Part shown: positions 8,798 through 63,269 of the stretch, in pieces
Numbering within the stretch: the first letter of the stretch is position 1
Layout: each line of letters starts with the position of its first letter
NCBI GenBank assembly: GCA_002269645.1
Contig: NIVC01000913.1
Location: 62,001-126,000 of the forward strand
Length of the DNA stretch: 64,000 nt
Source: Macrostomum lignano
Lineage: Eukaryota
Direction: 5' to 3'
Program-made: the position numbers and the translations under genes
The notes under the pieces: model-generated
Told to the model about the DNA's origin: nothing
The model's input: only the letters and a program-made list of their open reading frames with translations
Databases searched by the model: none

Positions 8798-9525
<728 letters not shown>

Positions 9526-9979
9526 GAAAAAGTGCAGCACGGGGCGCGCACTACAGTAGCTTCGTTCAGGCGTCCCAACTTACGTTTTTCACTTGGTTCG
9601 GTTTCAGATTCGGGCAGAGACACATTTGCGAGCTTCGGTGGAAGCGGCCTCTCAACCCCTCTCCAGCTCCCTTCAGCTGTCTCTCCTGCGTTCAGCTCGC
9701 GTCCGTCACATATTTTAATTTGTACGATTTGTTACACAAAAGTTTGGACTATCCTACTTATTAGTAGTCAGTGCGTAAATGCCATTATTCACCAAAATCA
9801 TAATATTAAGATCCTGAATGTATTCATTTCAGTAATTCAATTAGCAATCCATGCACCGACATTGAGACTCAGAAGAGATGCTGAATCAGTTAGAAAACTT
9901 GGAAGGTTCTATCCACATATAGTTCTTCATCACTTAGCCTAGCGGAGTTTTCCAGCACTCACAGATACCAACCGATTCA

Positions 9980-9993
9980 GGTGTGTGTGTGTG

Positions 9994-10031
<38 letters not shown>

Positions 10032-10036
10032 GTGTG
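9980..10036. repeat. (GT)n microsatellite
   Basis: Read directly. Confidence 0.95.
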
Positions 10037-10163
10037 TGGCACTTCTTTGAATTCATTGATTAATCTGTTCTGCTCAATGTACCTGCTTGACCGGGACGTT
10101 CTTGAAAGCATACATTTCATACCGTACAGCCGTGAGCGATGCATACACCTCGCTCATAACTAA

Positions 10164-10946
<783 letters not shown>

Positions 10947-13900
10947 TAATCACTTAACCATTGTCTACCATTACCTAATGCTATTCCCTGCATTTGGAGG
11001 AAATTTTGGAACAATATAAGGTGACACAAACAGGTTAATACAATAAGTCATTGTCTCTATGCTCACGCTGACTTATATATTCATACTAGTACGGTAAAAA
11101 TCAACTCTTATTGTGTTCACTCTGTTTATGTAGCAGAATGCCTACACATCTATAGCGGCATTGTTGCGGGGCACATGTGCCTACTAGTCTATCATTATAT
11201 GGATCTCCATTTCTCTTCAAATCAGATTCGTGGGTCAGTCACGTTGGCTATAGAAATTTGCTTCAAGACTTGCACAATGGGTTGCGATAGCCTTTTGTTC
11301 GACTGCCTATGGTCCAGCTTGAAGCTCGAGTGAATAGCTCACAATACAGGTGCCTTGATTGCGTCATTACAGAGCTGCTCATGGCATAACCATGACTGAT
11401 ATTTTTTTATTCCCAATTCTATCTTAAAGAAATCCTTATTTCAAAACCACTAATTAGTGCTTCCATTGTGCCGCTCCTGCTGTTGGTTTTGCTTTGCCCC
11501 TGAAGGCGAATTTGTGTCCGAATCAACATGCTGAAATTCGGACAGAACCCCGAGTTTGAATGTGCGAAGGCAGGTGCGATATTGGTTCGCATTCCACGTG
11601 CTGCCCTTTTTCGATGTCTACATTAATTCCTTTTTAAAAGAAGACTCTACCAAATTCGATTAATTTCAGGAAAGACAAGATAAATAAAAAAAAACTGAAA
11701 TTAGGCGAAAATTACTCGATGCTTATCTTTTATTGCGGCTTTCTTTGATGTTTTGGCACGAGTGAAAGAGAGAAAACATGAGAATTTGAGTGACATCCGC
11801 GTTTAAATAATGAGTCTCTTTTTTAATGAACACATTGATACTTAATACAATTTGTACCAATCGGTTCTATTGCATATTTTCAGATTTGAACCGTCTCATT
11901 GGAAAGGCCATCCTCAGAACCCATCATTCAGAGTGGCCGCTACCCCATTCCCTGTCTTTTATTAAGGCCGCTACCCCATCCCCTGTCCTTTATTGAGGCC
12001 GCTACCCCATCCCCTGTCTTTTAATGATGCTGCTACCCCATCCCCTGTCTTTTATTAAGGCCGCTACCCCATCCCCTGTCCTTTATTGAGGCCGCTACCC
12101 CATCCCCTGTCTTTTAATGATGCTGCTACCCCGTCCCATGAACTTTAATGAGGCCGCTACCCCATCCCATGAACTTTAATGAGGCCGCTACCCAATCCCA
12201 TGAACTTTAATGAGGCCGCTACCCAATCCCATGAACTTTAATGAGGCCGCTACCCCATCCCCTGTCTTTTAATGAGGCCGCTACCCCATCCCCTGTCCTT
12301 TATTGAGGCCGCTACCCCATCCTCTGTCTTTTAATGATGCTGCTACCCCGTCCCATGAACTCTAATGAGGCCGCTACCCAATCCCATGAACTTTAATGAG
12401 GCCGCTACCCAATCCCATGAACTTTAATGAGGCCGCTACCCCATCCCCTGTCTTTTAATGAGGCCGCTACCCCATCCCCTGTCCTTTATTGAGGCCGCTA
12501 CCCCATCCTCTGTCTTTTAATGATGCTGCTACCCCGTCCCATGAACTTTAATGAGGCCGCTACCCCATCCCCTGTCTTTTAATGAGGCCGCTACCCCATC
12601 CCCTGTCCTTTATTGAGGCCGCTACCCCATCCTCTGTCTTTTAATGATGCTGCTACCCCATCCCCTGTCCTTTATTGAGGCCGCTACCTATACCCTGTCT
12701 TTTAATGAGGCCGCTACCCCATCCCCTGTCCTTTATTGAGGCCGCTACCCCATCCTCTGTCTTTTAATGATGCTGCTACCCCATCCCCTGTCCTTTATTG
12801 AGGCCGCTACCTATACCCTGTCTTTTAATGATGCCGCCACCCCATCCCATGTCTTTTAACGATGCCGCTACCCCATCCCCTGTCTTTTAATGAGGCCGCT
12901 ACCTATACCCTGTCTTTTAATGATGCCGCTACCCCATCCCCTGTCTTTTAATGAGGCCGCTACCCCATCCCCTGTCCTTTAATGAGGCCGCTACCCCATC
13001 CCCTGTCCTTTATTGATTCCGCTACCCCATCCCCTGTCTTTTAATGAGGCCGCTACCCCATCCCCTGTCCTTTAATGAGGCCGCTACCCCATCCCCTGTC
13101 CTTTATTGATTCCGCTACCCCATCCCCTGTCTTTTAATGAGGCCGCTACCCAATCCCCTGAACTTAAATGAGGCCGCTACCCCATCCACTGTCCTTTATT
13201 GAGGCCGCTACCTATACCCTGTCTTTTAATGATGCCGCTACCCCATCCCCTGTCTTTTAATGAGGCCGCTACTCCATCCCATGTCTTTTAACGATGCCGC
13301 TACCCCATCCCCTGTCTTTTAATGAGGCCGCTACCTATACCCTGTCTTTTAATGATGCCGCTACCCCATCCCCTGTCTTTTAATGAGGCCGCTACCCCAT
13401 CCTCTGTCCTTTATTGAGGCCGCTACCCCATCCCCTGTCTTTTAATGATGCTGCTACCCCGTCCCATGAACTCTAATGAGGCCGCTACCCAATCCCATGA
13501 ACTTTAATGGGGGCCGCTACCCTATCCCCTGAACTTTAATGGGGCCGCTACCCTATCACCTGAACTTTAATGAGGCCGCTACCCCATCCTCTGTACTCTA
13601 ATAAGGCCGCTACCCCATCCCATGAACTTTAATGGGGCCGCTACCCCATCTCCTGAACTTTAATGGGGCTGCTACCCCATCCCTGTACTCTAATGAGGCC
13701 GCTACCCCATCCCCTGAATTTTAATGGGGCCGCTTCCCCTTTCCCCTGTTCTTCAGCGAGGCCACTTGTTTGATTTATCATCTGGTGTTAAGTTGCCAAG
13801 ACTTGAAACTAATCCTCAAAGTCAACAAACAAAGTTACAAACTCACTTTACAAACAAATAAAACAGAGTGTACAAGCAGAAGAACAAACAAAACTAATTA

Positions 13901-14194
13901 ATATCGTGCAACCCAGTTTAACCCAGACACCGAAGTGCTAACAATCTGCCACGCCTGATACCAACAGACGCGCAGCTATAGTCGGCAAAACTTCAAAGAA
14001 GGCTGCCATTGCGCTCCGGCAGTCGCCGACAGACAGATAAGAAAATCCGGCCGCTATCGCACCTCCTGATATAGCTAATTAATTAGCTCACCTGCCTATC
14101 TCTCTTTAGAGTCAGTTTTTTATTCACTGCCCGCCAGTCCCCCACACCGTGAAGTGGTCTCAATTAACCTGCAGTTAATTAACCTGCTTCGTCA

Positions 14195-14316
14195 CACGTG
14201 CAGCTCCCGGTGTGCCAGCCAATCAGAGAGCTCGGCTTTCTACTGGCCTTTGGTTTGGCGCTAGCAATGGAGGGCGAGAGGTGCGAACTCGAGAAAGAGG
14301 GAAGAAGATTATAAAA
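14195..14316 (+). promoter_or_regulatory. Promoter-like motifs upstream of the 96-aa ORF
   Basis: CACGTG at 14195, CCAAT at 14219, TATAAAA at 14310-14316; mirrored in the right arm. Confidence 0.45.
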
Positions 14317-14398
14317 GGTAAACCCTGCTACCCGTTGATCTACTTGAGATTCGAAAGCCAAATAAGATAACTAATTAGTCATATCGCAGGTAATCAGC

Positions 14399-14689
14399 AT
14401 GGCTTGCAGAAGAATCAGCTTTGATGGCTTCAGGCCCAGCAGCAGCGTGGCGGTGCTGCGGGAGCGACTTCAGAGCTTAGCGTCGGGAACTTCAACGAGT
14501 GTTGTGATCGAACTTGGTGAGACTGAGGTGAGCTGCCATCTGCCAGAGTTCTACCATAGACAACCTCTGCAGCTCAAGAACATCGCGGCTCCTGCTCAGG
14601 ATTCAACTGGCTGCGTGCTCAGGACCCACTACCCGCTGGCGAAGGAGAACCAGTCAGGTCTGGCACTGGCTGACTCATCAAATCGATAG
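14399..14689 (+). CDS. 96-aa orphan ORF, copy 1
   Basis: ATG in AGCATGG context downstream of a TATA box; intact in both arms; no family recognised with certainty. Confidence 0.45.
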   Translation: MACRRISFDGFRPSSSVAVLRERLQSLASGTSTSVVIELGETEVSCHLPEFYHRQPLQLKNIAAPAQDSTGCVLRTHYPLAKENQSGLALADSSNR

Positions 14690-15094
14690 ATCATATGAGC
14701 CTCTGAACGTTTTGTATTTACGTTTTGTATTTGCATAGAAACTGTTTCGTATATCTTGTATACTGTGCATGCTTTGTGTTCCAGAGCTCATATTGGGCTG
14801 TGATAACTCTTGTGAATAGTTTCATGTACTTTCCATGCTGCATGTACTTTTATGCAAATATTCTTTTAATCTCAAAGTGACAGCAATACAAATTTTATAA
14901 ATATACTTGCAAAAATGATTTGTCATTTTTAACATAAATTCACATTGACTTAAAAATTTGTTAAATTTTGCCGGCAGTGGTGGAGAAAGTCAGCAATTCG
15001 GAGCACAGTGCATTGTACTAAACGTATCAGAGAGAGCTGAATTATTTTATGTATTTGCGCAGGTTCAGCTAACATACAAATTTTCCCTTGACAG

Positions 15095-21640: not shown

Positions 21641-22194
21641 AGCAAATGTACAGTGTTTTGGAATAACTTTATTTATAGCCTTCTCTGCACACCGAGAGTG
21701 GAGAGGCTATGTTTAGCCATGACAGTTTAGTGAGAAATTCTAACCACTGCCCTCCCCTCTGTATTGGCAAACTCTGCAGCAGTTTAACAGTGGATGGCAA
21801 TTGGCAATTGGCAAATCGAGGGAATCCACTATCCAGCATGGTTTGTAAAAGCGAAAGATTTATGAAAAGGCGATGCAATGCAATACAACCCTACTAAATT
21901 AGTCACACCATGGAAATTTTAGGTTTCTCTTAAAAGTACTTTAAATATTAAATGTCCTAAGAAATGCTTATTTCCTTGGTTGTTAGACTGATGCAGACTG
22001 CAGTGGAGCTGAAAATACACAAATTCCTTTCAGGGCTGCAAATTGGCAAGAAAAATGACGTGATCAAAGCATGAGAACAGCCATGAGAGTAGTACGTCCC
22101 ACAAACTGCATGGCTTACCAAGCAGGAATGGGCAGACTTTTACTTCAAAAGCCAGATAAAGAATCCAGCTTATGTGCGGGCCAGATGAGAGTGG

Positions 22195-23001
22195 AAAGGA
22201 GAAGGAATAGACTATTAGAAGAGAGGGGAGGCGAGAGGGGGATATGAGAAAACATGGAATATAAGAGGAGAGACAAGTGGTGAGGAGAGAGCAGAGAAGA
22301 AGGGAGGAAGAAGTGAGAGGAGGGGAGAAAGGAGGGAGAGGAAAGAGTAAAGGCGAGAAGAGGGGAGAGATGAGACAGAGGATCGATGAGAGGAGAGTAG
22401 AGAAGAGTGAGAAGAGATGAGAGGAGATGAGAGATGAGAGAGCAGAAAGAAGATGACAGAGGGTCAAGAGGAGATGAGAGATTAGAGAGGAGAGAGTAGA
22501 AAGGATAGAAAAGAGAGGAGATAAGAGGGGGAGAGAAGGGGTGAGAAGAGAAGAGATAGAGATAAGAGAGGGGTGTAAGAAGAGGGGAGAAAGGAGAGAT
22601 GAGAGAGTAAAGGGAAGAGGAGAAGAGAGGAAAGAGATGAGATTGTAGAGATGAGACAGATCAAAGAAGAGATGAGAGATGAAAAAGGTGAGAGGAGAGT
22701 GCAGAGAGACAAGAGAAGATAATAGAGGAGAGAGAGTATAGAAAGGGAAAAGAAAAGAAGAGAGGAGTGAGAAGAGGTGAAGAGAAGAGTACAGAGGAGA
22801 TAAGTGAGAGAACGTATAAGAGAGTAAAGATGACAGATGAGAGAGCAGATGAACAGACGAGAGATGGGAGAGTGGAGAGAACAGAGGAGAGATAAGAGAG
22901 AAGAGATTACAGAGACTAGAGGAGAGAGGAGAGACAGGGAGAGAGAAGAGGAAACAGGAGAATGAAGAGGGGAGAGAGTAGAGAGAAGAGAGATGGGAGA
23001 G

Positions 23002-23072
<71 letters not shown>

Positions 23073-23500
23073 TGCAGAGCAGAGAGAAACAAGAAGAGAT
23101 AAGAGAGAAAATATAAAAGAAGAGAAAAGAGAGATGAAAGAGCGGACAAGAGAGAAGAGAGGTGAGGGAAGAGACGAGCGACGAGGGGAGAGAGAAGAGA
23201 TAAAACAAGAAAAGAGATGAGAGGAAAGAGGTGAGGGAAGAGACGAGAGAAGAGGGGAGAGAGGAGAGAGAGAGAGGAAAGAGAAGAGAGAAGAGAGAAA
23301 AGAATAGAGAGGAGAGGAGAGAGAAAACAAAAGAGTAGAGAGGAGAGAGGAGAGGAGAGAGAAAAGAATAGGGAAGAGATGAGATAAGAGAGATGAAAGA
23401 GAAGAGAAATGAGGGAAGATACGAAAGAAGAGAGGAGAGACGAGAGACAAGGGATGAGAGAGAAGAAAGGAAACAGAAGAGACGATAGAAATTTTAAAGG
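22195..23500. repeat. Polypurine (AG-rich) low-complexity tract of about 1.3 kb
   Basis: Almost only A/G, with a pure (AG)n core near 23010-23070. Confidence 0.95.
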
Positions 23501-24042
23501 ATCCAAGGGACATAGGGAGAGTCAGGGAGAGGCCAGAGTTTGCCAATACATGTTTTAGAGTCAGACAGACATTGCCTGGCATTCTGTAGAGTACCCTAGC
23601 CAACAATATCAATGTTTGCCTCAAAACCTAATTTTACACAAATGTGCTCCATTTTATGTCTACCTCTATCCTACTAACTATTAATTTGTTTGTGTATGGC
23701 CTTAGATTTCAGAATACATGCAAAAGTAGTTCCGGGGATTGGAATTCCCCGGGTTCAAAATCCGCGGGTTTCAACAGCTTGTAGGCCTATAAAAATGAAA
23801 CTCAAGCTAATAATAAGGCCAAAGCCAAGGGATAAAGAATGTTTAAATAGAAGGATAGAAAACTATATTTCTTAGAGTTTCTTAGAAAAATGTTTTAAAA
23901 TAAACATTTTAAAATAAAAAATGAAGTTAAGCCTAATGTTTTTGTATTTAAAATAAAAAAATAAGAGATTATTAGATATTAAAAAAACATTTTTGTATAA
24001 TAGTAGGGCCTACTGATAAAAAATAGCATAGGCAAAAAATGG

Positions 24043-24842: not shown

Positions 24843-27075
24843 ACAAAGTTTTAAGTCATAGTGGATTTATGTTAAAAATGACAAATCATTATTTAATAGT
24901 ATATTTATAAAATTTGTATTGCTGTCACTTTGAGATTAAAAGAATATTTGCATAAAAGTGCATGCAGCATGGAAAGTACAGGAAACTATTCACAAGAGTT
25001 ATCACAGCCCAATATGAGCTCTGGAACACAAAGCATGCACAGTATACAAGATATACAAAACAGTTTCTATATGCAAATACAAAACGTAAATACAAAACGT
25101 TCAGAGGCTCATATAATCTATCGATTTGATGAGTCAGCCAGTGCCAGACCTGACTGGTTCTCCTTCGCCAGCGGGTAGTGGGTCCTGAGCACGCAGCCAG
25201 TTGAATCCTGAGCAGGAGCCGCGATGTTCTTGAGCTGCAGAGGCTGTCTATGGTAGAACTCTGGCAGATGGCAGCTCACCTCAGTCTCACCAAGTTCGAT
25301 CACAACACTCGTTGAAGTTTCCGACGCTAAGCTCTGAAGTCGCTCCCGCAGCACCGCCACGCTGCTGCTGGGCCTGAAGCCATCAAAGCTGATTCTTCTG
25401 CAAGCCATGCTGATTACCTGCGATATGACTAATTAGTTATCTTATTTGGCTTTCGAATCTCAAGTAGATCAACGGGTAGCAGGGTTTACCTTTTATAATC
25501 TTCTTCCCCCTCTTTCTCGAGTTCGCACCTCTCGCCCTCCATTGCTAGCGCCAAACCAAAGGCCAGTAGAAAGCCGAGCTCTCTGATTGGCTGGCACACC
25601 GGGAGCTGCACGTGTGACGAAGCAGGTTAATTAAGTGCAGGTTAATTGAGACCACTTCACGGTGTGGGGGACTGGCGGGCAGTGAATAAAAAACTGACTC
25701 TAAAGAGAGACAGGCAGGTGAGCTAATTAATTAGCTATATCAGGAGGTGCGATAGCGGCCGGATTTTCTTATCTGTCTGTCGGCGACTGCCGGAGCGCAA
25801 TGGCAGCCTTCTTTGAAGTTTGCCGACTATAGCTGCGCGTCTGTTGGTATCAGGCGTGGCAGATTGTTAGCACTTCGGTGTCTGGGTTAAACTGGGTTGC
25901 ACGATATTAATTAGTTTTGTTTGTTCTTCTGCTTGTATACTCTGTTTTATTTGTTTGTAAAGTGAATTTGTAACTTTGTTTGTTGACTTTAAGGATGAGT
26001 TTCAAGTCTTGGCAACTTAACACCAGATGATAAATCAAACAAGTGGCCTCGCTGAAGAACAGGGGATAGAGTAGCGGCCCCATTAAAGTTCAGGGGATGG
26101 GGTAGCGGCCTCATTAGAGTACAGGGATGGGGTAGCGGCCCCATTAAAGTTCAGGGGATGGGGTAGCGGCCTCATTAGAGTTCAGGGAATCAGGGATGGG
26201 GTAGCGGCCTCATTAGAGTACAGGGATGGGGTAGCGTCCCTATTAAAGTTCAGGGGATGGGGTAGCGGCCTCATTAGAGTACAGGGATGGGGAAGCGGCC
26301 CCATTAAAGTTCAGGGGATGGGGTAGCGGCCTCATTAGAGTACAGGGATGGGGTAGCGTCCCTATTAAAGTTCAGGGGATGGGGTAGCGGCCTCATTAGA
26401 GTACAGGGATGGGGTAGCGGCCCCATTAAAGTTCAGGGGATGGGTCAGCGGCCCCATTAAAGTTCATGGGATGGGGTAGCGGCCTTATTAGAGTACAGGG
26501 ATGGGGTAGCGGCCCCATTAAAGTTCAGGGGATGGGTCAGCGGCCCCATTAAAGTTCATAGGATGGGGTAGCGGCCTCATTAGAGTACAGGGATGGGGTA
26601 GCGGCCCCATTAAAGTTCAGGGGATGAGTCAGCGGCCCCATTAAAGTTCATGGGATGGGGTAGCGGCCTCATTAAAGTTCAGGGGATAGGGTAGCGGCCC
26701 CATTAAAGTTCAGGGGTTAGGGTAGCGGCCCCATTAAAGTTCATGGGATTGGGTAGCGGCCCCATTAGAGTTCAGGGGACGGGGTAGCAGCATCATTAAA
26801 GTTCAAGGGATGGGGTAGCGGCCTCAATAAAAGACATGGGATGGGGTAGCGGCCTCATTAAAGTTCATGGGATGGGGTAGCGGCCTTATTAAAGTTCAGG
26901 GGATGGGGTAGCGGCCTTATTAAAGTTCAGGGGATGGGGTAGCGGCCTCATTAAAGTTCAGGGAATGGGGTAGCGGCCTCATTAAAGTTCAGGGGAAAGG
27001 GTAGCGGCCTTATTAAAGTTCAGGGAATCAGAGATGGGGTAGCGGCTTTATTAAAGTTCAGGGATGGGGTAGCAG
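24843..27075 (-). repeat. Right arm of the large inverted duplication (unique part 24843-26062, 31-bp array to 27075)
   Basis: Reverse complement of the left arm. Confidence 0.95.
25118..25408 (-). CDS. 96-aa orphan ORF, copy 2
   Basis: Same protein as 14399-14689 except G30E; one silent CAA/CAG difference also seen. Confidence 0.45.
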   Translation of the reverse strand: MACRRISFDGFRPSSSVAVLRERLQSLASETSTSVVIELGETEVSCHLPEFYHRQPLQLKNIAAPAQDSTGCVLRTHYPLAKENQSGLALADSSNR

Positions 27076-30901: not shown

Positions 30902-34023
<3,122 letters not shown>

Positions 34024-38970: not shown

Positions 38971-41037
38971 AGGTGCACGGATTTTGATCAACCAACTGTA
39001 ACAAAGACTCATTAGACTTGAGTAGCCCGTGCACACCATAAACCTTTTTCAAGCCGTTATAGACGTGCAGCTCAGCCGCTGTCCCGGGGGAGGAAGGCGC
39101 TCAGTCGAGCAGGAAGGCGAGGCAATCAAGGGGGTCCCGAGCGTGAATAGCAGGCAGCAGATGTTCAACCAGGCTAATTTGAGAACTTCTCAATCGCCGC
39201 CACTCCCCCCTCTCTGTCTCAGGCTCAGCTCGCAATATTGAGCATTTTCATGAAGAAAGGGCTTGCGCCATTCGAAACTGCGGTGGGATTTTCTTCCCCA
39301 ACTCCTCGGAGTCACAGCACGAGGCCCCACGCGACCGCGGAGTCGTCTGACATCTGGCCGACTGTTTCGATTCGCACCTGGCATTAGGCAGAGCCGTCAA
39401 TTCTCTATATGCAACCGGCCTTCCTCTCGGGGAGCTCAACCCTTTTTACTGTGCTTCTTGCCTGTCTCTCGTGTGCTCATTAGTGCGGAAAATCCCCACC
39501 TTCTCTTTAAAATAGACCAAGCCTTAGTGTTGGTTCCTGAATCCAAATTCTCGTTTAAGAAGCCCCTCTAAAACCTTGCACCTTAATAGTTTAAACGGTA
39601 TCTATAATTATATTAACTATATGTTAACTATATCGAACATATCCGTGATGCTGTTTATCAGTTTTTGCTTGTAAACACTATATTTGATCTGGTGTTGAGT
39701 CTATAGAGACATAGTATTTCACCAAGATTCGGCCTGTTCCTAATAACTTCCTTGGAAATGCCGATAAGAGATAAGAGAAGAGCATGGCTGCTTTTGCTGA
39801 ATTTCTACTCTTGTGCTTCTAACTTCTTGGTCGGCAATTCTTTCTCTGTCTACAGTCAGTCTATGGTAGAAGGCCCCACATGAAGGCCGCTCTCACAAGA
39901 ACAGGATTCGAATGAGTCACGCGTGCCGTGTCTTCTGTCGGTGAGGGGGGGGGGTTTCTTGATGAATTTGAACAGCTGCGAGGCCCCCATATTGTTCCCA
40001 TTTTCCTCGGGGCCCCCAAGGCTTTGCATGCAGCCTAGCTCGTGTTCAATATTTTTCCATTTATGGGAACAAAGAAGGGGGCCAGCCAAAACTATAAGGG
40101 AACGAAGAGCCACCACCATCTTTTACGGCCTCCCTCGAAGCCCCTTCACCCCCCCCCCCACTCTCGAGGGAAGCACACAGCGCATATGAGAGAGAAGGGC
40201 GCACGCGCCCCTGGGCCCTGTCGAACAAAATTAATGAGGCCACCGTGGGGCCCCAAATTCTAAAATCCGAACCCCCCACCTCGTGCCTGCCTGGCTATAT
40301 TGGGTTGTAAAACCAACACCCCACGCTTACCCCGTCTAGGCCTGTGCTTGTCTGTGCTGTGGTGGTGTGGAGCTGAAGGGGTTTCCCTCTGCCTCACTGC
40401 CTGCCCGTTTTACCCTGGCCCTGAAATCGATTAAGTCGCGTGGCCCAGGCCCGCTAGCCAAGACGCAAACCTTCGTCCTTGCCCCTCCACTCCACCCCAC
40501 TATGCACGCGACTAACTATAAGCTGTGTAAATAGACATACATAGCTTAGTTTCTTGCTTAATGTTTAATGATTCCTCTTATCTTGTATGTACAGTGGCGC
40601 TCTTCACTCTTCGAATGCTTTACTATATGCAGCAATTATGCTCCAAATAAAAGACGATCAAAATGAGCTGATGTAGAATTAAACAAGTTTTTTACACATT
40701 GTATTTTAAAATGCAAGTAACTTATTGGTCAATCGATGATATTATGTTTTTTATAAAAATATGATTATTATAAAGGAACAATAATGCTGACAGAAAGGAG
40801 AAACAAAATAGTTAATTAAATAAAAACAGTATATACATTGATTGTACTTTTGTAATTTTGCGCATGTAAACTTTGACGGATTTGAAACATTGAGCCATAA
40901 TGTTGAATATTAAATATAGAAATGGCAATGTTTTTACAGAGCATGTAAGAGAAAGTGATGGATTCAGATTAACGGTCAAGCAACATAATGCACTAACTCT
41001 GTCTCTTATGTCAGGATGTTAGAAATCAAAATCCTTT

Positions 41038-43171
41038 TTAATTGCCGCTCCCAGAAGATGAGGAACTGCCGGCCTTCTTTGCTCCATTGATTGCAGTTTC
41101 GTCCAGGGTCAAACGTCTCTTCTTTAGCGGGAAGATGTCTGTAAATGGAGATTTAAGAAAGATTGGCAGGCTTAAAAGGAGATTCTACAAAATGTTAAGT
41201 CTTATCTGTCGAATCGAATCCCAATTCTCGCGTTTGGGGGATTTGGGGATTTCTATTCTCTAGCCAATGGACATGGCAACCCAAGTGATTGCGTAATCGA
41301 GCTTGATATATTGACCGATAGATATCGTTAAATGTTTGGCTCCGTTTTGTCCCGACCTTCACCCGACTATTTTGGTTGCTATGCTAACATGGCGGCGGGC
41401 CCCCATAGGAGCTTGAAGAAGGTTTAACAAAGACTTGCGGGGCGCCGCGCCTTCCCATTCCCCATTTGGACGTGTACACAGTAAGAACTATGGGTGCCAT
41501 GTGGGCTGTCTCAGGGTCTGGCACTTTGCCAATACAATCATCGCCATGGGCACATATACGCTTTAATATTAAATTGCGTACATATTAGAATATTATACAA
41601 TACCCTCATAGCCTAACTAAAGTCTCATATTTAGAATTATTATTGTGTTATTGTTGGCAAGATGCCAGAAGCAGGTTTTTTATGAGTATGAATTCAGGCA
41701 ACTGCTCAGGTGAGACTACTGCTTATTAGTATTAGTATTTATATTGATATATCTGAAAATGCCTTCTCTCCTTATCATTATCTATTCTCTCATCATGGAC
41801 ATCTTACTTCTTATGCCGTTATAGATATCTATTTTCTCCTTATAGAATATTAATTTTCTTTTTGTAGGTATACTCTTCTCACACATTTCTATTCTCTCCT
41901 AATGGATATCTATTCTTTCCTCATAGTTATCTATTCTCTCATCGTGGATATCTATTCTTTCCTCATGGATACCTTATTCTCTCATCATTGATATCTAGAT
42001 TCCATTCTCTCATCATGAATATCTATTCTCTTCTCATTGATATCTATTCTCTCCCCATTGATATCTATTTTCTACTCATTGATATCTATTCTCTCATCGT
42101 AGATATCTATTCTCTTCTTATTGATATATTCTCTCCTGTCTCCTCATGTATATATATTCTCTCGTCATTGATATATATTCTCTCCTTATTGATATCTATT
42201 CTCTCCTCGTGGATGTCTATTTTCTCCTCATTGATATCTATTCTCTCCTCATTGATATCTATTCTCTCCTCATGGATGTCTATTTTCTCCTCATTGATAT
42301 CTATTCTCTCCTCATTGATATCTATTCTCTCCTCATGGATGTCTATTTTCTCCTCATTGATATCTATTCTCTCCTCATGGATGTCTATTTTCTCCTCATT
42401 GATATCTATTCTCTTCGACTTCTCATAGATTTATTCTAGCCGTTATCTTTTAGTTATATATAAAGTCACAGCATTAATTATATACAATTCAGCCTCATCT
42501 CTCGTGTGTGCATGGGTATAGGATACCAAAATATCAGATTTCAATGGAGTCAAGTCAGCTCCCTTCTCAGTCCTCAGCCTCTCACCTGTAATTTGTGCCT
42601 GCTGCGAACCAGAAAGCCTCGCTCTGCACGTCCTCGAGCTCAGACTCAGGCTCATACTCGTAGAGGAATTGCCGCCCGCAGAATAGCTTGATGAAGAAGT
42701 GGGAGTCTGCTGCTTTTTAATTGTCACCGGCTGTCGGATGCGCCGCCGACTTTTCTTGCTTGCAGTCGAAGAAGAAACTAATGCTGCTGCTGCTGCAATA
42801 GTCTGCTGCTCCCGGCGCGGCTTCATCTGGCGCTGGAGGCTCTGCTCCCTGTCTTCTTGCGCTTCGTCTTCCTCTACTAGGAGACTGTCGTGGCAGCAGC
42901 TGCAGCCTGAGCTGTGACAACGATAATAGTCCGGCAGTTGATCGGCGCTCGCCAAACGCCAACTAAGACAGCCATATTTAGCTTTAAACCTGTCCGCATC
43001 TGCAGCAATGCACAGCCGCATGCTAGCTAGAAGAGCCTGGACAAGCTGCTGTTGACTTGAACCAGCAGCAACTGCCTGCTCTGTGTCGTGTGGCGGTGAG
43101 GGCGACTGCGTTGACGGTGGAAACAGGGCGGAGCTATTGCTGGTTGATGACAATAGCTTGCGTTGCAGCAT
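41038..43171 (-). CDS. CDKN1: Divergent Cip/Kip-type CDK inhibitor; exons 43171-42586 and 41138-41038, about 228 aa
   Basis: DRFKAKYG..CLSWRLASADQLPDYYR resembles the p27 QRKWNF..KYEWQEVEKGSLPEFYYR. A phase-1 splice (ACAG|gtgag...tttacag|AC) builds QAQITDIFPLKKRRL, a p21-like PIP degron with an NLS. Confidence 0.7.
41760..42430. repeat. Degenerate 21-bp minisatellite (GATATCTATTCTCTCCTCATT) in the CKI intron
   Basis: Read directly. Confidence 0.9.
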
Positions 43172-44764
43172 TTTGCTGGTTTTTAGCGAATATTAGAATT
43201 CAGATCCACCGGATTGATTGGGAATTGGACTGTGAACCTTGATTTCAGTTTTCCAAGCTGGTTTTATAGTTCCCTCGCCATAACAGTTTAGCCAAGAAGG
43301 AGGAGGGTGGGGTGGGTGGTGGGTCCTGGGCCAGCCAATAGCGGCTGAGTGGGGCCAACCCCCCCCCCCCCCCAACTGGAAACTTCATGTGCAGTTCAAA
43401 AACCGCCCTCCAACCCTCAATCCCCAACCCCCCTGCAATAAACCCGGGCCTGCAGTCTGTGCATATGGAATAGAAACGTGGGGAAGGGCGGAACGGGGAA
43501 GTGTTATCTGACTTAGGGTGCCAGTTAAGGTCTTTGTTGAACTATTTAAAATTTAAATTAGGTCTCGCTTCGCTAGAGGCGTTACTTTTGTGTATGCCGT
43601 ATAGGGAGGCGAGGGGTGGTGGACAGGACAGGAAAAGTGATCCTTGTGTGCTTGAAATTCAATCGCGTGGACCAACGCAGTATGAAAATTACGTGACCAA
43701 AGCAAAACAATTACAAATTAACAATTCAAGTTTTTATTTCGACAGATTTCAGATTTGCAACATCTTTAAAAATTGGAGTTGAATTCCTTTCCGAGAAGTT
43801 CCAACTATAACGGTCAAAAATTATATGCGTAATCGCGAATCCTACCTTAATTGTAGGCGGTTTCAATGTGCTCTTTATTTTGAGTTTGCCTGGACTTGCG
43901 CGTGTATATAATTTTGCATTTTATATCGAAGGCCTGGTTGCACTGGTCATTCGCTGACACTAGAATAATCTCCTGTTTCCAACAACTCACTGAAATTCCT
44001 ATTCACAGAAATTGGTATTCATGGAAAATACTATTCACAGATAGCCCTTGCTCACAGAAATTCCTATTCGATGAATCCATCCTCACTGAAATCTCCTATC
44101 CACTGAAATCCTTCATCACTGAAATCCCAAATCTCACAGAATTATTTCTTGCAATTATTCACTTTTCCTTACAGGTTTCCAGGTTTTGTAAACAAAATAT
44201 TCAGTACAACCCGTAATACCCTACTGTGAGTAGAAATATACAGAAAAGGCAACTATTTTCATCGTTAGCAGCTGCCTGCCTCGGCTGTCTGCACATGGTG
44301 AAAAGTAAAAAAAATATTCACGTTAATTTTTACACGCTGAAAGCCGAACGGCAAAAACGAAAACTTTGGCTTTAGAAAAACTGTTAAGTTAAAAAATGAG
44401 CTCGTGTTTTCATCAAGGCGTCCAGGTTCGCAGCCCAATGCGCAAAAGTGTATCATATGCTTCGAGTGAACGCAGTCCCTGTCTGGCCACAACAAGAGAA
44501 ACAACAAACTCAAAGTATAACTGCGCAATTGTTAACGAGGATCTACATGGCAAACGGAATAGCAACAGTAGTTTTTGAGGTACCAGGACTTAGGGATTGG
44601 ACACAGTGAGGCGCTGTCCTCTCAAGGACCACTGGTGGAGATGTGATAGTACTAAAGTACTAATAAAACTTTCAAATGCTAATATTCAGTGTCGGATGCT
44701 AATTTCCCGTGTCAAATGCAAATATCTAGTGTCAGATGCAAATATCCAGTGTCAGATGCTAATA

Positions 44765-59970: not shown

Positions 59971-60524
59971 CCACTTGCGTGAGCGGTATTGACATTTCCA
60001 TTGATAGAGATTGAGCTCAGCTGGGTCTCTGGGCGAGATAATGGACTGCGGCAAAGTCTGGCGCCCATTATAGCCAGGCAACTGTCTTATCTGACAAATC
60101 AAGACTTTCAGGCATTTATCAGCCAGTTCCAATCTACGCCAGTGTCCCGCCTTGCTGAGCTGCTGACAGGGCAGCAATGCAAAAGCAGCCTTGCAGCGCC
60201 AAGCCTCAATTCCAATCTCTGCATTATTTGTCATTTAAATAGTCATTTCTTGGGACTTGGCTTTGCTTCGGCTGTCAGCGATCATAAATATATTTTTTAA
60301 TTGAAGTTTCTCAGCCCCGCAGTTTTTCTGTCCACAAATCCGGTGTGCAATGAATTCAATGGCCAGGGTTTATGGGATTGTCACCAGCTCTGGGCCCGCC
60401 TGCTTCCGCCTGCTTCAGTTCCCGTCTTAGTCCACAGGTTCAGCTGGGCCTGAATTTGCTGCCTCTCTGCACACTCCGCTGCAATGGGGGACTGCTTCCC
60501 GTCCGACTCTCTTTTCTCTCCCCT

Positions 60525-61625
60525 TTGACTCTCCCCTTTGACTCTCCCCTTTGACTCTCCCCCTCTGACTCTCCCCTTTGACTCTCCCCTTTGACTCTCC
60601 CCCTCTGACTCTCCACTTTGACTCTCCCCTTTGACTCTCCCCTTTGACTCTCCCCCTTTGACTCTCCCCCTCTGACTCTCCCCCCTCTGACTCTCCCCTC
60701 TGACTCTCCCCTTTGACTCTCCCCCTCTGACTCTCCCTTCTGACTCCCCTCCGACTCTCCCCTTTGACTCTCCCCTTTGACTCTCCCCTTTGACTCTCCC
60801 CTTTGATTCTCCCCTTTGACTCTCCCCTTTGACTCTCCCCTTTGACTCTCCCCTTTGACTCTCCCCTCTGACTCTCCCCTTTGACTCTCCCCTTTGACTC
60901 TTCCCTTTGACTCTCCCCTTTGACTCTCCCCTCTGACTCTCCCCCTCTGACTCTCCCCCTCTGACTGTCCCCGCTCTGATTCTCCCCTTTGACTCTCCCC
61001 CTCTGACTCTCCCCCCTCTGACTCTCCCCCTCTGACTCTCCCCTCTGACTTTCCCCTCTGACTCTCTCTGACTCTCCTCCTCTAACTTTACCCTCTGACT
61101 CTCCCCGCTCTGACTCTCCCCCCTGACTCTCACCCCTGACTCACACCCCTGACTCTCATCCCTGACTCTCCCTTTGACTCTCCCCTTTTATTCTCCCCTC
61201 TGACTCCCCACTATGACTCTCTCCTCTGACTCTCCCCTCTGACTTTACCCTCTGCTGACTCTCCACTTTAACTCTCCCTTCTGACTCTCCCCGCTCTGAC
61301 TCTCCACTCTGACTCCCAGCTCTGACTCACTCCGCTCTGACTCTCCCCTCTGACTCTCCCTTCTGACTCCCCTCTGACTCTCCCCTCTGACTCTCCCCTC
61401 TGACTCTCCCCCCTCTAACTTTACCCTCTGACTCTCCCCCATCTAACTTTACCCTCTGACTCTCCCCCATCTAACTTTACCCTCTGACTCTCCCCGCTCT
61501 GACTCTCACCCTTGACTCTCTCCTCTGACTCTCCCCTCTGCTGACTCTCCACTTTAACTTCCCCTTCTGACTCTCCCCGCTCTGACTCTCCCCGCTCTGA
61601 CTCTCCACTCTGACTTCCCTTATAA
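60525..61625. repeat. 12-13-bp minisatellite (GACTCTCCCCTYT)
   Basis: Read directly. Confidence 0.95.
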
Positions 61626-62164
61626 CTCTCTCCTTACCTACCCCCCTACCTGCTCAGGTTCATACTTAACAGAAAATATCTGGAACGAGTGTATATAGCA
61701 TTGTTATGAACTATTTACAGCTCTACTGAAGAAAAAAACAAATTAGAATACTGGCATTGGACTCCGGTCTGATTTTCCTCTCTGACTCTCTGACTCTGAC
61801 TCAAGTTATTGATCATAATTGCTGCTGTTTGGTACAATAAAAGCCTTGCTATATGAACCATCAGTTTATAGGTACCGGTATGTTAGATTTCGAAACAAGT
61901 TCGACCAAAGTTCGAATAAAAAAACCAGCTCATACGGTAGTTATGGACCACGCGCTATTCGAGTTTTATAACCCAAATCATGGCCCATATGCTCCCCCAT
62001 ATGCCCCTCCATAAACTGGTGAGGAAGGCTTGCTTCTTGGTTTTTGTGCGCCTAAACTGTGTTGGATGAACCTGAGTGAGCATCTCTGACTGCAACTTTG
62101 TTTCCGGCTAGGATTAGCTGAGTTGAATAAAATCTAGAATATGGGATAGCAATTATTAACAGAA

Positions 62165-62710
62165 GGGTGAAAGAGGAGGGTGAAAGGAGAGAAGGGAAAG
62201 AGTGAATGGAGAGAGTGAACGGAGAGAGTGAACGGAGAGAGTGAAGGGAGAGAGTGAAGGGAGACAGTGAAGGGAAAGAGTGAAGGGAGAGAGTGAAGCG
62301 AGAGAGTGAAGGGAGAGAGTGAAGCGAGAGAGTGAAGGGAAAGAGTGAAGGGAGAGAGTGAAGGGAGAGAGTGAAGCGAGAGAGTGTAGGGAGAGAGTGA
62401 AGCGAGAGAGTGAAGGGAGAGAGTGAAGCGAGAGAGTGAAGGGAGAGAATGAAGCGAGAGAGTGAAGGGAAAGAGTGAAGGGAGAGAGTGAAGGGAGAGA
62501 GTGAAGCGAGAGAGTGAAGGGAGAGAGTGAAGCGAGAGAGTGAAGGGAGAGAGTGAAGGGAGAGAGTGAAGCGAGAGAGTGAAGGGAAAGAGTGAAGGGA
62601 GAGAGTGAAGCGAGAGAGTGAAGGGAGAGTGTGAAGGGAGAGAGTGAAGGGAGAGAGTGAAGGGTGAGAGTGAAGGGTGAGAGTGAAGGGTGAGAGTAAA
62701 GGGTGAGAGC
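62165..62710. repeat. 13-bp minisatellite (GAGAGAGTGAAGS)
   Basis: Read directly. Confidence 0.95.
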
Positions 62711-63269
62711 AGACTTATCTTTCGCTCCGTATGTGGGCGGCTAGGAAACTGGGGTACAAAGGACAGATAAAGCACAGCGCCTCAACACTGCAAGGCCAGC
62801 AGCCAGCATTCCGATTGTGAAATGCGATTTAATTTCGCAGTTTTTTTCGGCACAGAAACCAGCAGCAGCATCTGGCGGCCGTGTGCGCACTGGGAGGTGT
62901 CGGGGGGTCGGGGGGGGAGGAGCTGGGTTGTCCAAACACGTCAGGGGGGGTTCTGACTGTGCTCGGCGCTTGTCCTCAGTAATTCTGTCTCGATTTGGAG
63001 GGCCGTTTCTTTGGCGGCAGGATCAAAGAGAATTAGGGGGGGTGGGTAGGGAGAGATCGTGGCAGACCCGCAGCGTCTGGCGCATAAGAATTCTGGGTTT
63101 TGCTGTTTTCGGACGAAATTGATGGCATCTTGGAGAGGAGGCAGCAGTGCGGGCCATTGCTTCAGATCTCCAATTGGCTTTTCTTTTGCAGAGAGTCGAA
63201 TTTACTCCAATAATGCAGAATTCGAAGGAAATTTACAACTTTGAAATGCCTGAGACAAAGTTGAGATGC

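What the first reader, a model, noticed from the sequence alone, without database searches (positions are those of the whole stretch)
41038..43171. Hidden, highly divergent Cip/Kip CDK inhibitor whose PIP degron appears only after splicing
Seen: the ORF track gives a featureless 242-aa ORF. A phase-1 splice at 42586 to 41138 gives QAQIT-D-IFPLKKRRL, matching the p21 QTSMTDFYHSKRRL (Q, hydrophobic, TD, basic at +4). Upstream, RFKAKY..SWRLASADQLPDYYR resembles the CDK-binding half of p27, with the NFDF..PL hairpin apparently shortened, an RKL motif at the extreme N-terminus and a Cys/His cluster (CHSSGCSCCH) after the domain. From memory, human CDKN1A also has a phase-1 intron in the Asp of TD; if so, intron position supports homology. 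CKIs evolve fast and are often missed, so this matters for stem-cell cycle control.
Basis: partly seen in the sequence, partly recalled or inferred. Interest (0 to 1): 0.7.

Follow-up and report, generated by a model that had tools for sequence, protein, structure and literature searches.

The report
Hidden p21-like CDK inhibitor, free-living flatworm
An unannotated two-exon gene in the free-living flatworm Macrostomum lignano encodes a very divergent p21/p27-type cell-cycle brake, which matters because this gene family was recently reported absent from all free-living flatworms and that absence was used to argue that parasitic flatworms got theirs by horizontal gene transfer.

Summary
The minus-strand ORF 43171-42443 has a single strong donor (CAG|GTGAGA, exon ends 42586, phase 1). 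It joins to ttacag|AC at 41138 and gives a 228-aa protein ending QAQIT-D-IFPLKKRRL..., a PIP degron. The window is Macrostomum lignano (GCA_002269645.1, contig NIVC01000913.1).

Standard searches fail: Pfam CDI, phmmer against 1.84 billion proteins, PDB, and tblastn with published queries. Three independent lines support Cip/Kip homology:
- Kinase-inhibitory domain: profiles built from published parasitic-flatworm CKIs align aa 43-84 once the family's hypervariable hairpin loop is collapsed. The score is 13.8 bits, 0 of 20,000 shuffles reach it, and it ranks 1 of 1,376 six-frame segments. hhalign on the uncut alignment gives the same alignment (P = 5e-4).
- C-terminus: the spliced C-terminus matches a p21/parasite-CKI degron profile (3 of 20,000 shuffles); the unspliced ORF does not.
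- Intron: it splits the Asp codon of 'TD' in phase 1, as mapped here in two frog p21 genes and seen at a gharial p27 acceptor. Read-through '...VTG' gene models imply the same in parasite cki.

Expression, CDK inhibition and PCNA binding are untested. Codon bias is weak. The hairpin is reduced to 4 residues.

The parts
43262..43373 (-). Putative core promoter: G14 run (43360-43373), inverted CCAAT box ATTGG (43335-43339), TATA box CTATAAAA (43262-43269), ~95 nt upstream of the ATG
   Evidence: Direct reading and regex. There is no ATG between the TATA box and 43171, and an in-frame stop lies 7 codons upstream. Consensus matches only; not tested.
42586..43171 (-). Coding exon 1 (586 nt, aa 1-195 plus the first base of Asp196)
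   Evidence: ORF. Single GTRAG donor CAG|GTGAGA. GC falls from 0.55 in the exon to 0.38 immediately after the donor.
43151..43162 (-). N-terminal cyclin-docking-type motif R4-K5-L6-L7 (RxL-hydrophobic)
   Evidence: Regex. It sits at the extreme N-terminus, as in nematode (MSSARRCLFG) and cestode cki-2 (MRRLF) proteins. The spacer to the helix is ~33 aa versus ~10 in relatives, and no profile aligned this motif.
42920..43045 (-). Kinase-inhibitory-domain-like segment, aa 43-84: linker helix LVQALLASMRLCIAADADRFKAKY (Tyr66 = p27 Trp60 position), 4-residue linker GCLS in place of the beta-hairpin loop, then W71-RLASADQ-L79-P-D-Y82-Y83-R84 (p27 Trp76 and LPEFY 3-10 helix equivalents)
   Evidence: Loop-collapsed flatworm KID HMM: 13.8 bits, 0/20,000 shuffles, rank 1/1,376. 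Robust over 25 boundary variants and over subsets including vertebrates. hhalign on the uncut alignment: P = 4.9e-4.
42890..42919 (-). Cys/His cluster CHSSGCSCCH (aa 85-94) directly after the domain
   Evidence: Direct reading. There is no counterpart in the CKIs compared; significance unknown.
42713..42757 (-). Basic, NLS-like stretch KKSRRRIRQPVTIKK (aa 139-153) in the disordered middle region
   Evidence: Direct reading. AF2 mean pLDDT 40.7, consistent with disorder. Nuclear targeting is inferred only.
42587..42601 (-). First half of the PIP degron: Q191-A-Q-I-T195 (the G at 42586 begins the Asp196 codon)
41139..42585 (-). Single coding intron (1,447 nt, GT..AG, phase 1, inside the Asp codon of the PIP-box TD); contains a 21-bp minisatellite (~25 copies, 41869-42414)
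   Evidence: Same position and phase as in Discoglossus and Leptodactylus p21. Consistent with the gharial p27 acceptor and with parasite cki '...VTG' read-through models.
41038..41138 (-). Coding exon 2 (101 nt): completes Asp196, then IFPLKKRRLTLDETAINGAKKAGSSSSSGSGN and TAA (41040-41038)
   Evidence: C-terminal degron profile: spliced 7.0 bits (3/20,000 shuffles), unspliced -1.1.
41110..41138 (-). Second half of the PIP degron: (D196)-I-F-P-L-K201-K202 (basic residues at +3/+4), followed by R203-R204-L205, a second RxL-type motif as in p21 (KRRL)
40564..40569 (-). Nearest canonical-variant poly(A) signal ATTAAA, 468 nt after the stop
   Evidence: Regex. No AATAAA lies closer. Weak evidence only.

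Best explanation
This is a real, unannotated two-exon gene of Macrostomum lignano encoding a 228-aa, intrinsically disordered member of the Cip/Kip (p21/p27) lineage.

Shown: the gene structure; sequence homology of aa 43-84 to the kinase-inhibitory domain of flatworm and vertebrate CKIs; a p21-type C-terminal PIP degron that exists only in the spliced product; and an intron at the family's conserved position and phase.

Inferred mechanism:
- The N-terminal RKLL docks on the cyclin hydrophobic patch.
- The helix (aa ~38-66) bridges cyclin and CDK.
- Trp71 packs on the CDK N-lobe, and the LPDYY turn places a tyrosine (Tyr83, equivalent to p27 Tyr88) in the ATP site, inhibiting the kinase.
- Basic stretches direct the protein to the nucleus.
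- In S phase or after DNA damage, the C-terminal QAQITDIFPLKK binds DNA-loaded PCNA and recruits CRL4-Cdt2 for destruction, as for p21, Xic1, Dacapo and CKI-1.

It differs from all compared relatives in that the beta-hairpin loop between the two aromatic anchors is reduced to 4 residues. The loop is 15 residues in p27 and roughly 11-45 in the parasite CKIs. Contact with the CDK N-lobe may therefore be reduced.
For: - Organism: an exact protein match places the window in M. lignano contig NIVC01000913.1.
- Gene model: a unique strong donor directly after the unique Q..[ILMV]T, and one plausible acceptor out of 840. TATA and CCAAT elements upstream. A GC step at the donor.
- KID, uncut flatworm HMM: aligns aa 42-66 (p = 0.006). 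Vertebrate HMM: aligns aa 67-84 (p = 0.009).
- KID, loop-collapsed flatworm HMM: aligns aa 43-84 at 13.8 bits, 0/20,000 shuffles, rank 1/1,376 window segments. Across 25 boundary variants it scores 6.1-18.8 bits, with no shuffle reaching it in 21 of 25.
- KID, subsets: significant against cestode cki-1, cki-2, trematode and vertebrate+nematode subsets separately. hhalign on the uncut alignment: P = 4.9e-4, same alignment.
- Degron: C-terminal profile 7.0 bits, 3/20,000 shuffles, only after splicing.
- Intron: phase 1 in the Asp codon of TD in two frog p21 genes. The p27 acceptor is consistent. At least 8 mis-annotated parasite cki models read '...[VM]TG' plus junk where orthologues read '...TDYF'.
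- Disorder: AF2 pLDDT 40.7.
Against: - Pfam CDI gives no hit at E<=10.
- phmmer against 1.84 billion representatives finds nothing.
- The uncut vertebrate profile ranks the ORF only ~100th in the window.
- I chose the loop-collapse model after seeing the candidate. This is mitigated by the 25-variant grid and by hhalign on the uncut alignment.
- Codon bias is weak: GC3 is 0.54 and flat, versus 0.63-0.81 in neighbouring exons; the log-likelihood per codon is only 0.013, though this frame is the best of three.
- No transcript evidence could be obtained, and no protein in the public sets searched contains this ORF.
- WNFDF is missing, the RxL-to-helix spacer is long, and PIP position 7 is Ile.
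- There is no TIMM21/TUBB microsynteny.
- No homeologous copy could be retrieved to test purifying selection.
Confidence: 0.8

Rival explanations
1. It is a Cip/Kip-derived gene that no longer inhibits CDKs. With the beta-hairpin lost and WNFDF gone, the protein would act mainly as a PCNA-binding CRL4-Cdt2 substrate or PCNA regulator, or as a cyclin-docking adaptor, rather than as a kinase inhibitor.
For: The hairpin is reduced to 4 residues and Trp60 is replaced by Tyr. The Pfam CDI model fails. The C-terminal degron is the best-preserved element.
Against: The elements that insert into the kinase and dock on the cyclin are retained: W71, LPDYY with two Tyr, and the N-terminal RKLL. Cestode cki-2 also has Tyr at the Trp60 position. 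Loop length already varies several-fold (roughly 11-45 residues) among the parasite CKIs, including the functional S. mansoni one.
Confidence: 0.12
2. It is not a functional gene: either a decaying relic or a chance ORF whose motifs are coincidental, and not expressed.
For: Codon bias is weak. It is absent from every public protein set searched. There is no canonical AATAAA near the stop. A stop-free run of 249 codons in ~55% GC sequence is not in itself extremely rare (my estimate: ~0.05-0.25 expected per window).
Against: The joint occurrence of three things is far beyond chance: a KID-like segment (0/20,000 shuffles, rank 1/1,376), a degron formed only by a canonical GT-AG splice, and the family-specific intron position and phase. 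The ORF, start codon, splice sites and stop are all intact, and promoter elements are present.
Confidence: 0.06
3. The unspliced 242-aa ORF is the real product and the splice does not occur.
For: The ORF stays open for 47 codons past the donor.
Against: The read-through tail drops to 38% GC and scores -1.1 bits on the degron profile, against 7.0 for the spliced form. The same 'ITG...' read-through signature marks known mis-annotations in parasite cki models.
Confidence: 0.02

Closest known systems
Vertebrate p21 (CDKN1A) and Xenopus Xic1-type Cip/Kip inhibitors
   Same: - Order of elements: N-terminal RxL, linker helix, Trp plus LP-x-[FY]-Y turn, disordered basic middle, then a C-terminal PIP degron (TD, basic +4) followed by K/R-R-R-L.
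- Gene structure: nearly all coding sequence in one exon, with a phase-1 intron splitting the Asp codon of TD (frog p21).
- W-to-LP spacing is identical to p27.
   Different: - No WNFDF and no beta-hairpin loop (4 residues versus 15).
- Tyr in place of Trp60.
- A ~33-aa Ser/Pro-rich insert between the RxL and the helix.
- Ile at PIP position 7.
- A Cys/His cluster after the domain.
- A 30-residue tail after the degron.
- Not detected by Pfam CDI.
Parasitic-flatworm CKI (cki-1; S. mansoni Smp_199050 and orthologues; Wendt & Collins 2025, PMC12693960)
   Same: - The helix ends D-A-[ED]-R-F-x-x-K-[WY] (KKDAERFAKKW versus AADADRFKAKY).
- 'SWRL' is identical to Fasciola and Echinostoma.
- The C-terminus is ...[VI]TD[YI]F-x-[VL]-K-[KR]-R.
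- The intron position, inferred from read-through models, is the same.
- A variable-length loop lies between the two aromatic anchors.
   Different: - The parasite proteins keep WNF and CRRLFG, and score 11-30 bits on a vertebrate CDI profile.
- They lie between TIMM21 and TUBB; this gene lies between an Arfaptin and a PDZRN-like gene.
- The parasite turn is PEA.FY, one residue shorter, rather than LP.YY.
Cestode cki-2 (e.g. EmuJ_001155400)
   Same: - Tyr at the Trp60 position (FRKKYQFDF).
- S-W-x4-A-x2-[LV]-P-x-[FY]-Y-R has identical spacing (CWSWEAVDACLVPRFYR versus CLSWRLASADQLPDYYR).
- The RxL motif is within about the first 12 residues.
- It was the only BLAST query that touched the candidate.
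   Different: - cki-2 has a 30-residue loop and no terminal TD degron.
- The by-eye resemblance of its internal PQINTIFPTVRR motif to QITDIFPLKKRR is not statistically supported (1.0 bit, 962/20,000 shuffles).
C. elegans CKI-1 / Drosophila Dacapo
   Same: Invertebrate Cip/Kip proteins with an N-terminal RxL and a PIP degron targeted by CRL4-Cdt2.
   Different: Both retain WGFDF and a normal hairpin.

Membership tests
Cip/Kip CDK inhibitors (CDI domain, Pfam PF02234 / IPR003175) | Match to the curated Pfam CDI model at or above its threshold | tested here: not met
   No CDI hit at E<=10 for the full protein, aa 1-109 or aa 40-96.
Cip/Kip CDK inhibitors (CDI domain, Pfam PF02234 / IPR003175) | Statistically supported sequence homology of the kinase-inhibitory domain to family members | tested here: met
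   Loop-collapsed flatworm profile: 13.8 bits, 0/20,000 shuffles, rank 1/1,376. Robust over 25 variants and over four family subsets including vertebrates. hhalign on the uncut alignment: P = 4.9e-4. Caveat: the model form was chosen post hoc, and the uncut HMMs reach only p ~ 0.006-0.009 per half.
Cip/Kip CDK inhibitors (CDI domain, Pfam PF02234 / IPR003175) | Cyclin-binding RxL (Cy) motif N-terminal to the CDK-binding segment | tested here: inconclusive
   RKLL is at aa 4-7, positioned as in nematode and cestode CKIs. It is not the conserved [CR]R.LFG, it lies ~33 aa further from the helix, and no profile aligned it.
Cip/Kip CDK inhibitors (CDI domain, Pfam PF02234 / IPR003175) | W-N-F-D-F beta-hairpin that remodels the CDK N-lobe | tested here: not met
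   Replaced by Y66-GCLS-W71. The loop is 4 residues, versus 15 in p27 and roughly 11-45 in flatworm CKIs.
Cip/Kip CDK inhibitors (CDI domain, Pfam PF02234 / IPR003175) | Trp76-equivalent plus LP-x-[FY]-Y 3-10 turn carrying the ATP-site tyrosine | tested here: met
   W71-x7-L79-P-D-Y-Y-R has the same spacing as p27, p57 and cki-2. The motif is unique in all six frames of the window and was aligned by the vertebrate HMM.
Cip/Kip CDK inhibitors (CDI domain, Pfam PF02234 / IPR003175) | Conserved phase-1 intron inside the Asp codon near the C-terminus (TD of the PIP box in p21) | tested here: met
   Window: ACA G|gtgaga..ttacag|AC. Discoglossus p21: ACA G|gtacag..tttag|AT. Leptodactylus p21: ACC G|gtaatt..cctcag|AT. 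Gharial p27 acceptor: cccctag|AT. Parasite cki: '...VTG' read-through models. Human CDKN1A was not directly checked.
Cip/Kip CDK inhibitors (CDI domain, Pfam PF02234 / IPR003175) | Binds and inhibits cyclin-CDK complexes | not testable with these tools
   No multimer prediction or biochemistry was available. Single-chain AF2 is uninformative (pLDDT 40.7).
CRL4-Cdt2 substrates with a PIP degron (p21, Xic1, Dacapo, CKI-1, Cdt1, Set8) | Q-x-x-[ILMV]-T-D-[FY]-[FY] with a basic residue at +4 | tested here: met
   QAQITDIFPLKK has TD, and K at +3 and +4. Position 7 is Ile, which is non-canonical. Profile of 18 CKI C-termini: 7.0 bits, 3/20,000 shuffles.
CRL4-Cdt2 substrates with a PIP degron (p21, Xic1, Dacapo, CKI-1, Cdt1, Set8) | PCNA-dependent, Cdt2-dependent degradation in S phase | not testable with these tools
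   Requires experiments. The presence of Cdt2, DDB1 and CUL4 in M. lignano was not checked.
Parasitic-flatworm cki-1 orthology group | Microsynteny: downstream of TIMM21, upstream of TUBB | tested here: not met
   No Pfam domain of any kind in ORF segments of 45 aa or more within ~7 kb on either side. The flanking genes are Arfaptin (30.9-34.0 kb) and a PDZRN/LNX-like gene (49.4-51 kb).

The most novel reading that the evidence does not exclude
Free-living flatworms never lost Cip/Kip inhibitors. They carry vertically inherited but extremely divergent, 'loop-less' versions that BLAST and Pfam cannot see.

If so:
(i) The proposed horizontal transfer of cki into the ancestor of parasitic flatworms (Wendt & Collins 2025) rests on a detection artefact.
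(ii) The view that planarian neoblasts exit the cell cycle without any CDK inhibitor (cdh1 only) needs re-testing, using profiles seeded with this gene.
(iii) A kinase-inhibitory domain lacking the beta-hairpin defines a minimal mode of CDK inhibition.
Probability: 0.45. Interest if true: 0.85.

Novelty: new variant of a known kind. Interest (0 to 1): 0.78.

Why it matters
Wendt & Collins (Sci Adv 2025, PMC12693960) found cki in 57 of 60 parasitic-flatworm genomes and in 0 of 37 free-living flatworm genomes and transcriptomes. That set included three Macrostomum species, and M. lignano was checked for synteny. From this absence they argued for horizontal gene transfer. A 2026 preprint (10.64898/2026.09.16.750956) likewise reports no INK or CIP/KIP genes in Schmidtea or Dugesia and proposes that cdh1 is the sole control of cell-cycle exit.

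The gene described here is a credible Cip/Kip homologue in a free-living flatworm. I show that the published tblastn procedure cannot detect it, even in a 64-kb database. This makes the question of vertical versus horizontal origin directly testable, by profile searches seeded with this sequence and by RNAi in an organism with established transgenesis and RNAi. It also offers a candidate brake on neoblast proliferation in a regeneration model.

The shared phase-1 intron in the TD Asp codon is a simple, sequence-independent marker for recognising further hidden family members. It is also a natural example of a kinase-inhibitory domain without the hairpin.

Tried and rejected
- Pfam on the full protein and on sub-fragments: only chance DUF hits.
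- Word-indexed homology search: nothing. That index looks incomplete, because a CDI-profile query returned only hits of 133 aa or less, so its negatives are weak.
- Exhaustive phmmer against 1.84 billion representatives: 0 hits.
- PDB phmmer: only a chance FAN1 match, E = 1.6.
- Rfam on the window: nothing.
- Uncut vertebrate CDI HMM: 3 bits, p ~ 0.009, rank ~100 of 1097 domain hits in the window. Not discriminating on its own.
- AF2 on the single sequence: pLDDT 40.7, not worth a fold search.
- p53 response elements: none near the gene, and counts are at chance level.
- TIMM21/TUBB synteny: absent.
- M. lignano spliced-leader sequence: not in the window.
- Exact look-ups of the 242-aa and 228-aa products: not in any collection.
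- Resemblance to the cestode cki-2 internal PQINTIFPTVRR motif: not supported (1.0 bit, 962/20,000 shuffles).
- Closer affinity to flatworm than to vertebrate CKIs: flatworm profiles score somewhat higher (up to 18.8 versus 13.6 bits), which is not decisive. I therefore make no claim about orthology to cki-1 versus cki-2.
- Nematode-like ENA contig (L004): shows a PIP-like motif split at the same place, but with an in-frame TAA on a 2x-coverage contig, so it was not used as evidence.
Full report
OBSERVATION. Exon 1 ends at G 42586, followed by GTGAGA. The acceptor tttcttaaatctccatttacag|A lies at 41138. The junction is phase 1 and completes a GAC (Asp) codon, and translation continues for 33 codons to TAA at 41040-41038. 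The product is 228 aa and ends ...SGSQQAQIT-D-IFPLKKRRLTLDETAINGAKKAGSSSSSGSGN. It matches the PIP-degron pattern Q-x-x-[ILMV]-T-D-x-[FYW]-x3-[KR], with Ile rather than Phe/Tyr at position 7.

The ORF contains exactly one GTRAG donor, and that donor directly follows the only Q..[ILMV]T in the protein. Of 840 AG dinucleotides in the next 10 kb, three give Asp plus a hydrophobic-aromatic pair. Two of these sit in a purine-rich 21-bp minisatellite, lack a polypyrimidine tract and hit stops after 11-15 codons. Upstream of the ATG lie a TATA box (43262-43269), an inverted CCAAT box (43335-43339) and a G14 run. There is no upstream ATG after the TATA box, and there is an in-frame stop 7 codons upstream.

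ORGANISM AND CONTEXT. The window is a repeat-rich metazoan genome. It contains a RING gene, an Arfaptin gene (30.9-34.0 kb, +), a PDZRN/LNX-like gene (49.4-51 kb, -) and a CCDC61-like (identified by eye, not tested) coiled-coil gene. A 97-aa ORF at 3937-4230 is an exact match to a protein clustered with BOX15_Mlig proteins. It maps to Macrostomum lignano assembly GCA_002269645.1, contig NIVC01000913.1. M. lignano is a free-living flatworm.

Neither the 242-aa nor the 228-aa product, nor anything similar, is in the public protein sets searched. An exhaustive phmmer search of 1.84 billion representatives gave 0 hits, and exact look-ups found nothing. By that measure the gene appears unannotated. 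I could not check community annotations.

WHY STANDARD TESTS FAIL. Pfam CDI gives no match at E<=10. PDB phmmer gives only a chance hit. The score is only 3 bits, reached by 45 of 5,000 shuffles, and the ORF ranks about 100th of 1097 domain hits among the window's 1,376 six-frame segments. The strict motif W-x7-[LIVM]P-x-[FYL]Y is nevertheless unique to this ORF in the whole window.

FLATWORM COMPARISON. Table S1 of Wendt & Collins (Sci Adv 2025, PMC12693960) lists the parasitic-flatworm CKI protein sequences. They resemble the candidate much more closely than vertebrate proteins do:
- Helix end: trematode KKDAERFAKKWNF and RKDLDRFQNKWNF, versus AADADRFKAKYGC.
- CDK-binding segment: Fasciola and Echinostoma SSWRLFQPEAGFY, versus LSWRLASADQLPDYY.
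- Cestode cki-2: SAFRKKYQFDF...CWSWEAVDACLVPRFYRP, versus DRFKAKYGCLSWRLASADQLPDYYRC. The spacing is identical, and Tyr at the p27 Trp60 position has a precedent.
- C-termini: ...KVTDYFAVKRRRQSMK, versus QITDIFPLKKRRLTL.

The loop between the two aromatic anchors is hypervariable in the family: 15 residues in p27, 11-12 in three of the four cestode cki-1 sampled (26 in Spirometra), about 30 in cki-2 and up to about 45 in trematodes. In the candidate it is 4 residues.

STATISTICS ON THE KINASE-INHIBITORY DOMAIN. All figures below come from local HMMER or hhalign runs.
- An uncut profile of 18 flatworm KIDs aligns aa 42-66, the helix ending DRFKAKY. 118 of 20,000 shuffles reach the score. HMMER cannot bridge the ~30 loop columns that the candidate lacks.
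- With the loop columns removed, the profile aligns aa 43-84 continuously at 13.8 bits. None of 20,000 shuffles reaches this (maximum 8.3). The ORF ranks first of 1,376 six-frame segments, at 12.1 bits against 6.5 for the next.
- I chose the cut after seeing the candidate, so I repeated the test for 25 boundary choices. Scores ranged from 6.1 to 18.8 bits. No shuffle out of 3,000 reached the candidate in 21 of 25 variants. The rank was 1 in 16 of 25 and never worse than 9.
- The signal holds separately for cestode cki-1 (9.2-15.6 bits), cestode cki-2 (4.1-15.3), trematodes plus a monogenean (6.9-9.8) and vertebrate plus nematode domains (6.8-13.6).
- hhalign on the uncut flatworm alignment gives the same alignment, candidate aa 51-84 with a 30-column gap, at P = 4.9e-4.
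- As a positive control, the parasite KIDs score 11-30 bits on my vertebrate profile. The candidate is therefore far more divergent than they are.

C-TERMINUS. A profile of 13 parasite and 5 vertebrate p21 C-termini scores the spliced product at 7.0 bits, reached by 3 of 20,000 shuffles. The unspliced ORF scores -1.1, and no unspliced six-frame segment of the window exceeds 5.8.

INTRON POSITION. I fetched two amphibian p21 loci and mapped their exons.
- Discoglossus pictus...CTA ATG ACA G|gtacag ... tttag|AT TTT TAC.
- Leptodactylus fuscus...ATT ACC G|gtaatt ... cctcag|AT TAC TAT.

Both have a phase-1 intron inside the Asp codon of the PIP-box TD, exactly as in the window (ACA G|gtgaga ... 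ttacag|AC ATC TTC). A gharial p27 locus shows a polypyrimidine tract followed by cccctag|AT TCC (D|SSPQNKR), which is consistent with the same phase and codon. The chimpanzee p27 isoform P0011 (...PLE|DSSTQ) agrees.

In the published parasite table, at least eight mis-annotated models read ...[VM]TG plus unrelated residues where their orthologues read ...TDYF. These are E. caproni, P. westermani, three Echinococcus species, T. solium, M. corti, S. solidus and D. latus. This is the signature of reading G|GT through a phase-1 intron in that Asp codon. The candidate's own unspliced ORF reads QAQITG-ERL in the same way. For a gene with one coding intron, landing on this exact codon and phase by chance has a probability of about 1 in 700 (my estimate: 228 codons x 3 phases).

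WHAT IT MOST LIKELY IS AND DOES. Shown: an intact two-exon gene whose product has, in family order, an N-terminal RxL-type motif; a helix and Trp/LP-x-Y-Y turn homologous to the Cip/Kip kinase-inhibitory domain; a disordered basic middle region (AF2 pLDDT 40.7); and a p21-type PIP degron followed by RRL.

Inferred from the p27-CDK2-cyclin A structure and from the CRL4-Cdt2 literature (established knowledge): RKLL docks on the cyclin; the helix bridges to the CDK; Trp71 and Tyr82/83 engage the N-lobe and ATP site; and the degron couples destruction to DNA-loaded PCNA in S phase. The missing hairpin is a real structural difference and may weaken or alter CDK binding.

CAUTIONS.
- Codon bias is weak. 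GC3 is 0.54 and flat, against 0.63-0.81 in neighbouring exons. The correct frame is still the best of three, and GC drops from 0.55 to 0.38 exactly at the donor.
- I obtained no transcript evidence.
- I could not retrieve homeologous copies for a selection test.
- There is no TIMM21/TUBB synteny and no p53 element near the gene.
- The nearest poly(A)-like signal is ATTAAA, 468 nt after the stop.
- Human CDKN1A itself was not checked.

COMPARISON WITH WHAT IS KNOWN, AND SIGNIFICANCE. Wendt & Collins report cki in 57 of 60 parasitic-flatworm genomes and in 0 of 37 free-living flatworm genomes and transcriptomes. Their survey table lists M. cliftonense, M. hystrix and M. karlingi as negative, and M. 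lignano appears in their TIMM21 synteny table. From that absence they infer horizontal transfer. A 2026 preprint reports no INK or CIP/KIP genes in Schmidtea or Dugesia.

Their search of free-living flatworms used BLAST. I ran their three queries with their matrix against this 64-kb window alone. There was no hit on the candidate's domain. Only a cki-2 query, which they did not use for that survey, gave a 17-residue hit at E = 0.8, which would scale to roughly 1e4 against the whole genome. The reported absence is therefore expected even if the gene is present.

My data do not establish whether this gene is orthologous to parasite cki-1 or to cki-2. Flatworm profiles score only moderately better than vertebrate ones, and a by-eye resemblance to a cki-2 internal motif failed its test.

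VERDICT. The gene is best described as a new, structurally reduced variant of the Cip/Kip family, in a lineage where the family was thought absent. Confidence in homology is about 0.8-0.85. Confidence that it acts as a CDK inhibitor is lower, about 0.65, and needs experiments.

Noticed in passing
window 3937-4230 (+) and 6357-6638 (+): Two paralogous small proteins with signal peptides (97 and 93 aa) share a C-terminal motif SLQ[SA]I[LF]YKLGH followed by basic residues. They look like secreted-peptide or neuropeptide precursors. The first is annotated only as a hypothetical protein.
   Followed up: partly
window 13739-14907 and 24898-26069: A ~1.2-kb inverted repeat, 98-99% complementary, with arms ~10 kb apart that enclose the CCDC61-like gene (16.5-18.5 kb). 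Each arm carries an identical 104-aa ORF. It could be transposon termini, an inverted segmental duplication or an assembly artefact.
   Followed up: partly
window 41869-42414: A 21-bp minisatellite (consensus TATTCTCTCCTCATAGATATC, ~25 copies, 79% matches) fills over a third of the candidate's intron. It creates long spurious ORFs on the plus strand.
   Followed up: yes
window 30902-34023 (+): I reconstructed an Arfaptin gene as 5 exons, all GT-AG (30902-31088, 31695-31945, 32821-33050, 33446-33611, 33829-34023; 342 aa). A (GACA)n microsatellite fills intron 3. This exact product is not in the public protein collections, so the public model, if there is one, differs.
   Followed up: partly
locus L004 (ENA contig ctg304942, nematode-like CKI P0041), ~990-1210: Downstream of a CKI-1-like first exon, the sequence ...QQQS*IRG|gtaagt...aacaag|AT-YLLKRK would form a PIP-like motif split by a phase-1 intron in the Asp codon, as in the window. 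An in-frame TAA sits inside it. The contig has 2x coverage, so this may be a sequencing error or a pseudogene.
   Followed up: partly
Table S1 of PMC12693960 (published parasite CKI models): Many deposited parasite cki gene models end '...[VM]TG' plus unrelated residues, because they read through the conserved phase-1 intron. They therefore lack the true last exon (DYFAV.KR...). The pattern marks these models as truncated.
   Followed up: partly
tool behaviour: A CDI-profile query to the word-indexed protein search returned only 43 hits, all 133 aa or shorter. Full-length p21, p27 and p57 were missing. Negative results from that tool should not be read as evidence of absence.
   Followed up: no
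window 7006-8545, 9072-10957, 22030-23624, 60381-62775: Kilobase-scale microsatellite and low-complexity tracts give long artefactual ORFs in several frames on both strands. This is typical of the M. lignano assembly and a hazard for ORF-based annotation.
   Followed up: no
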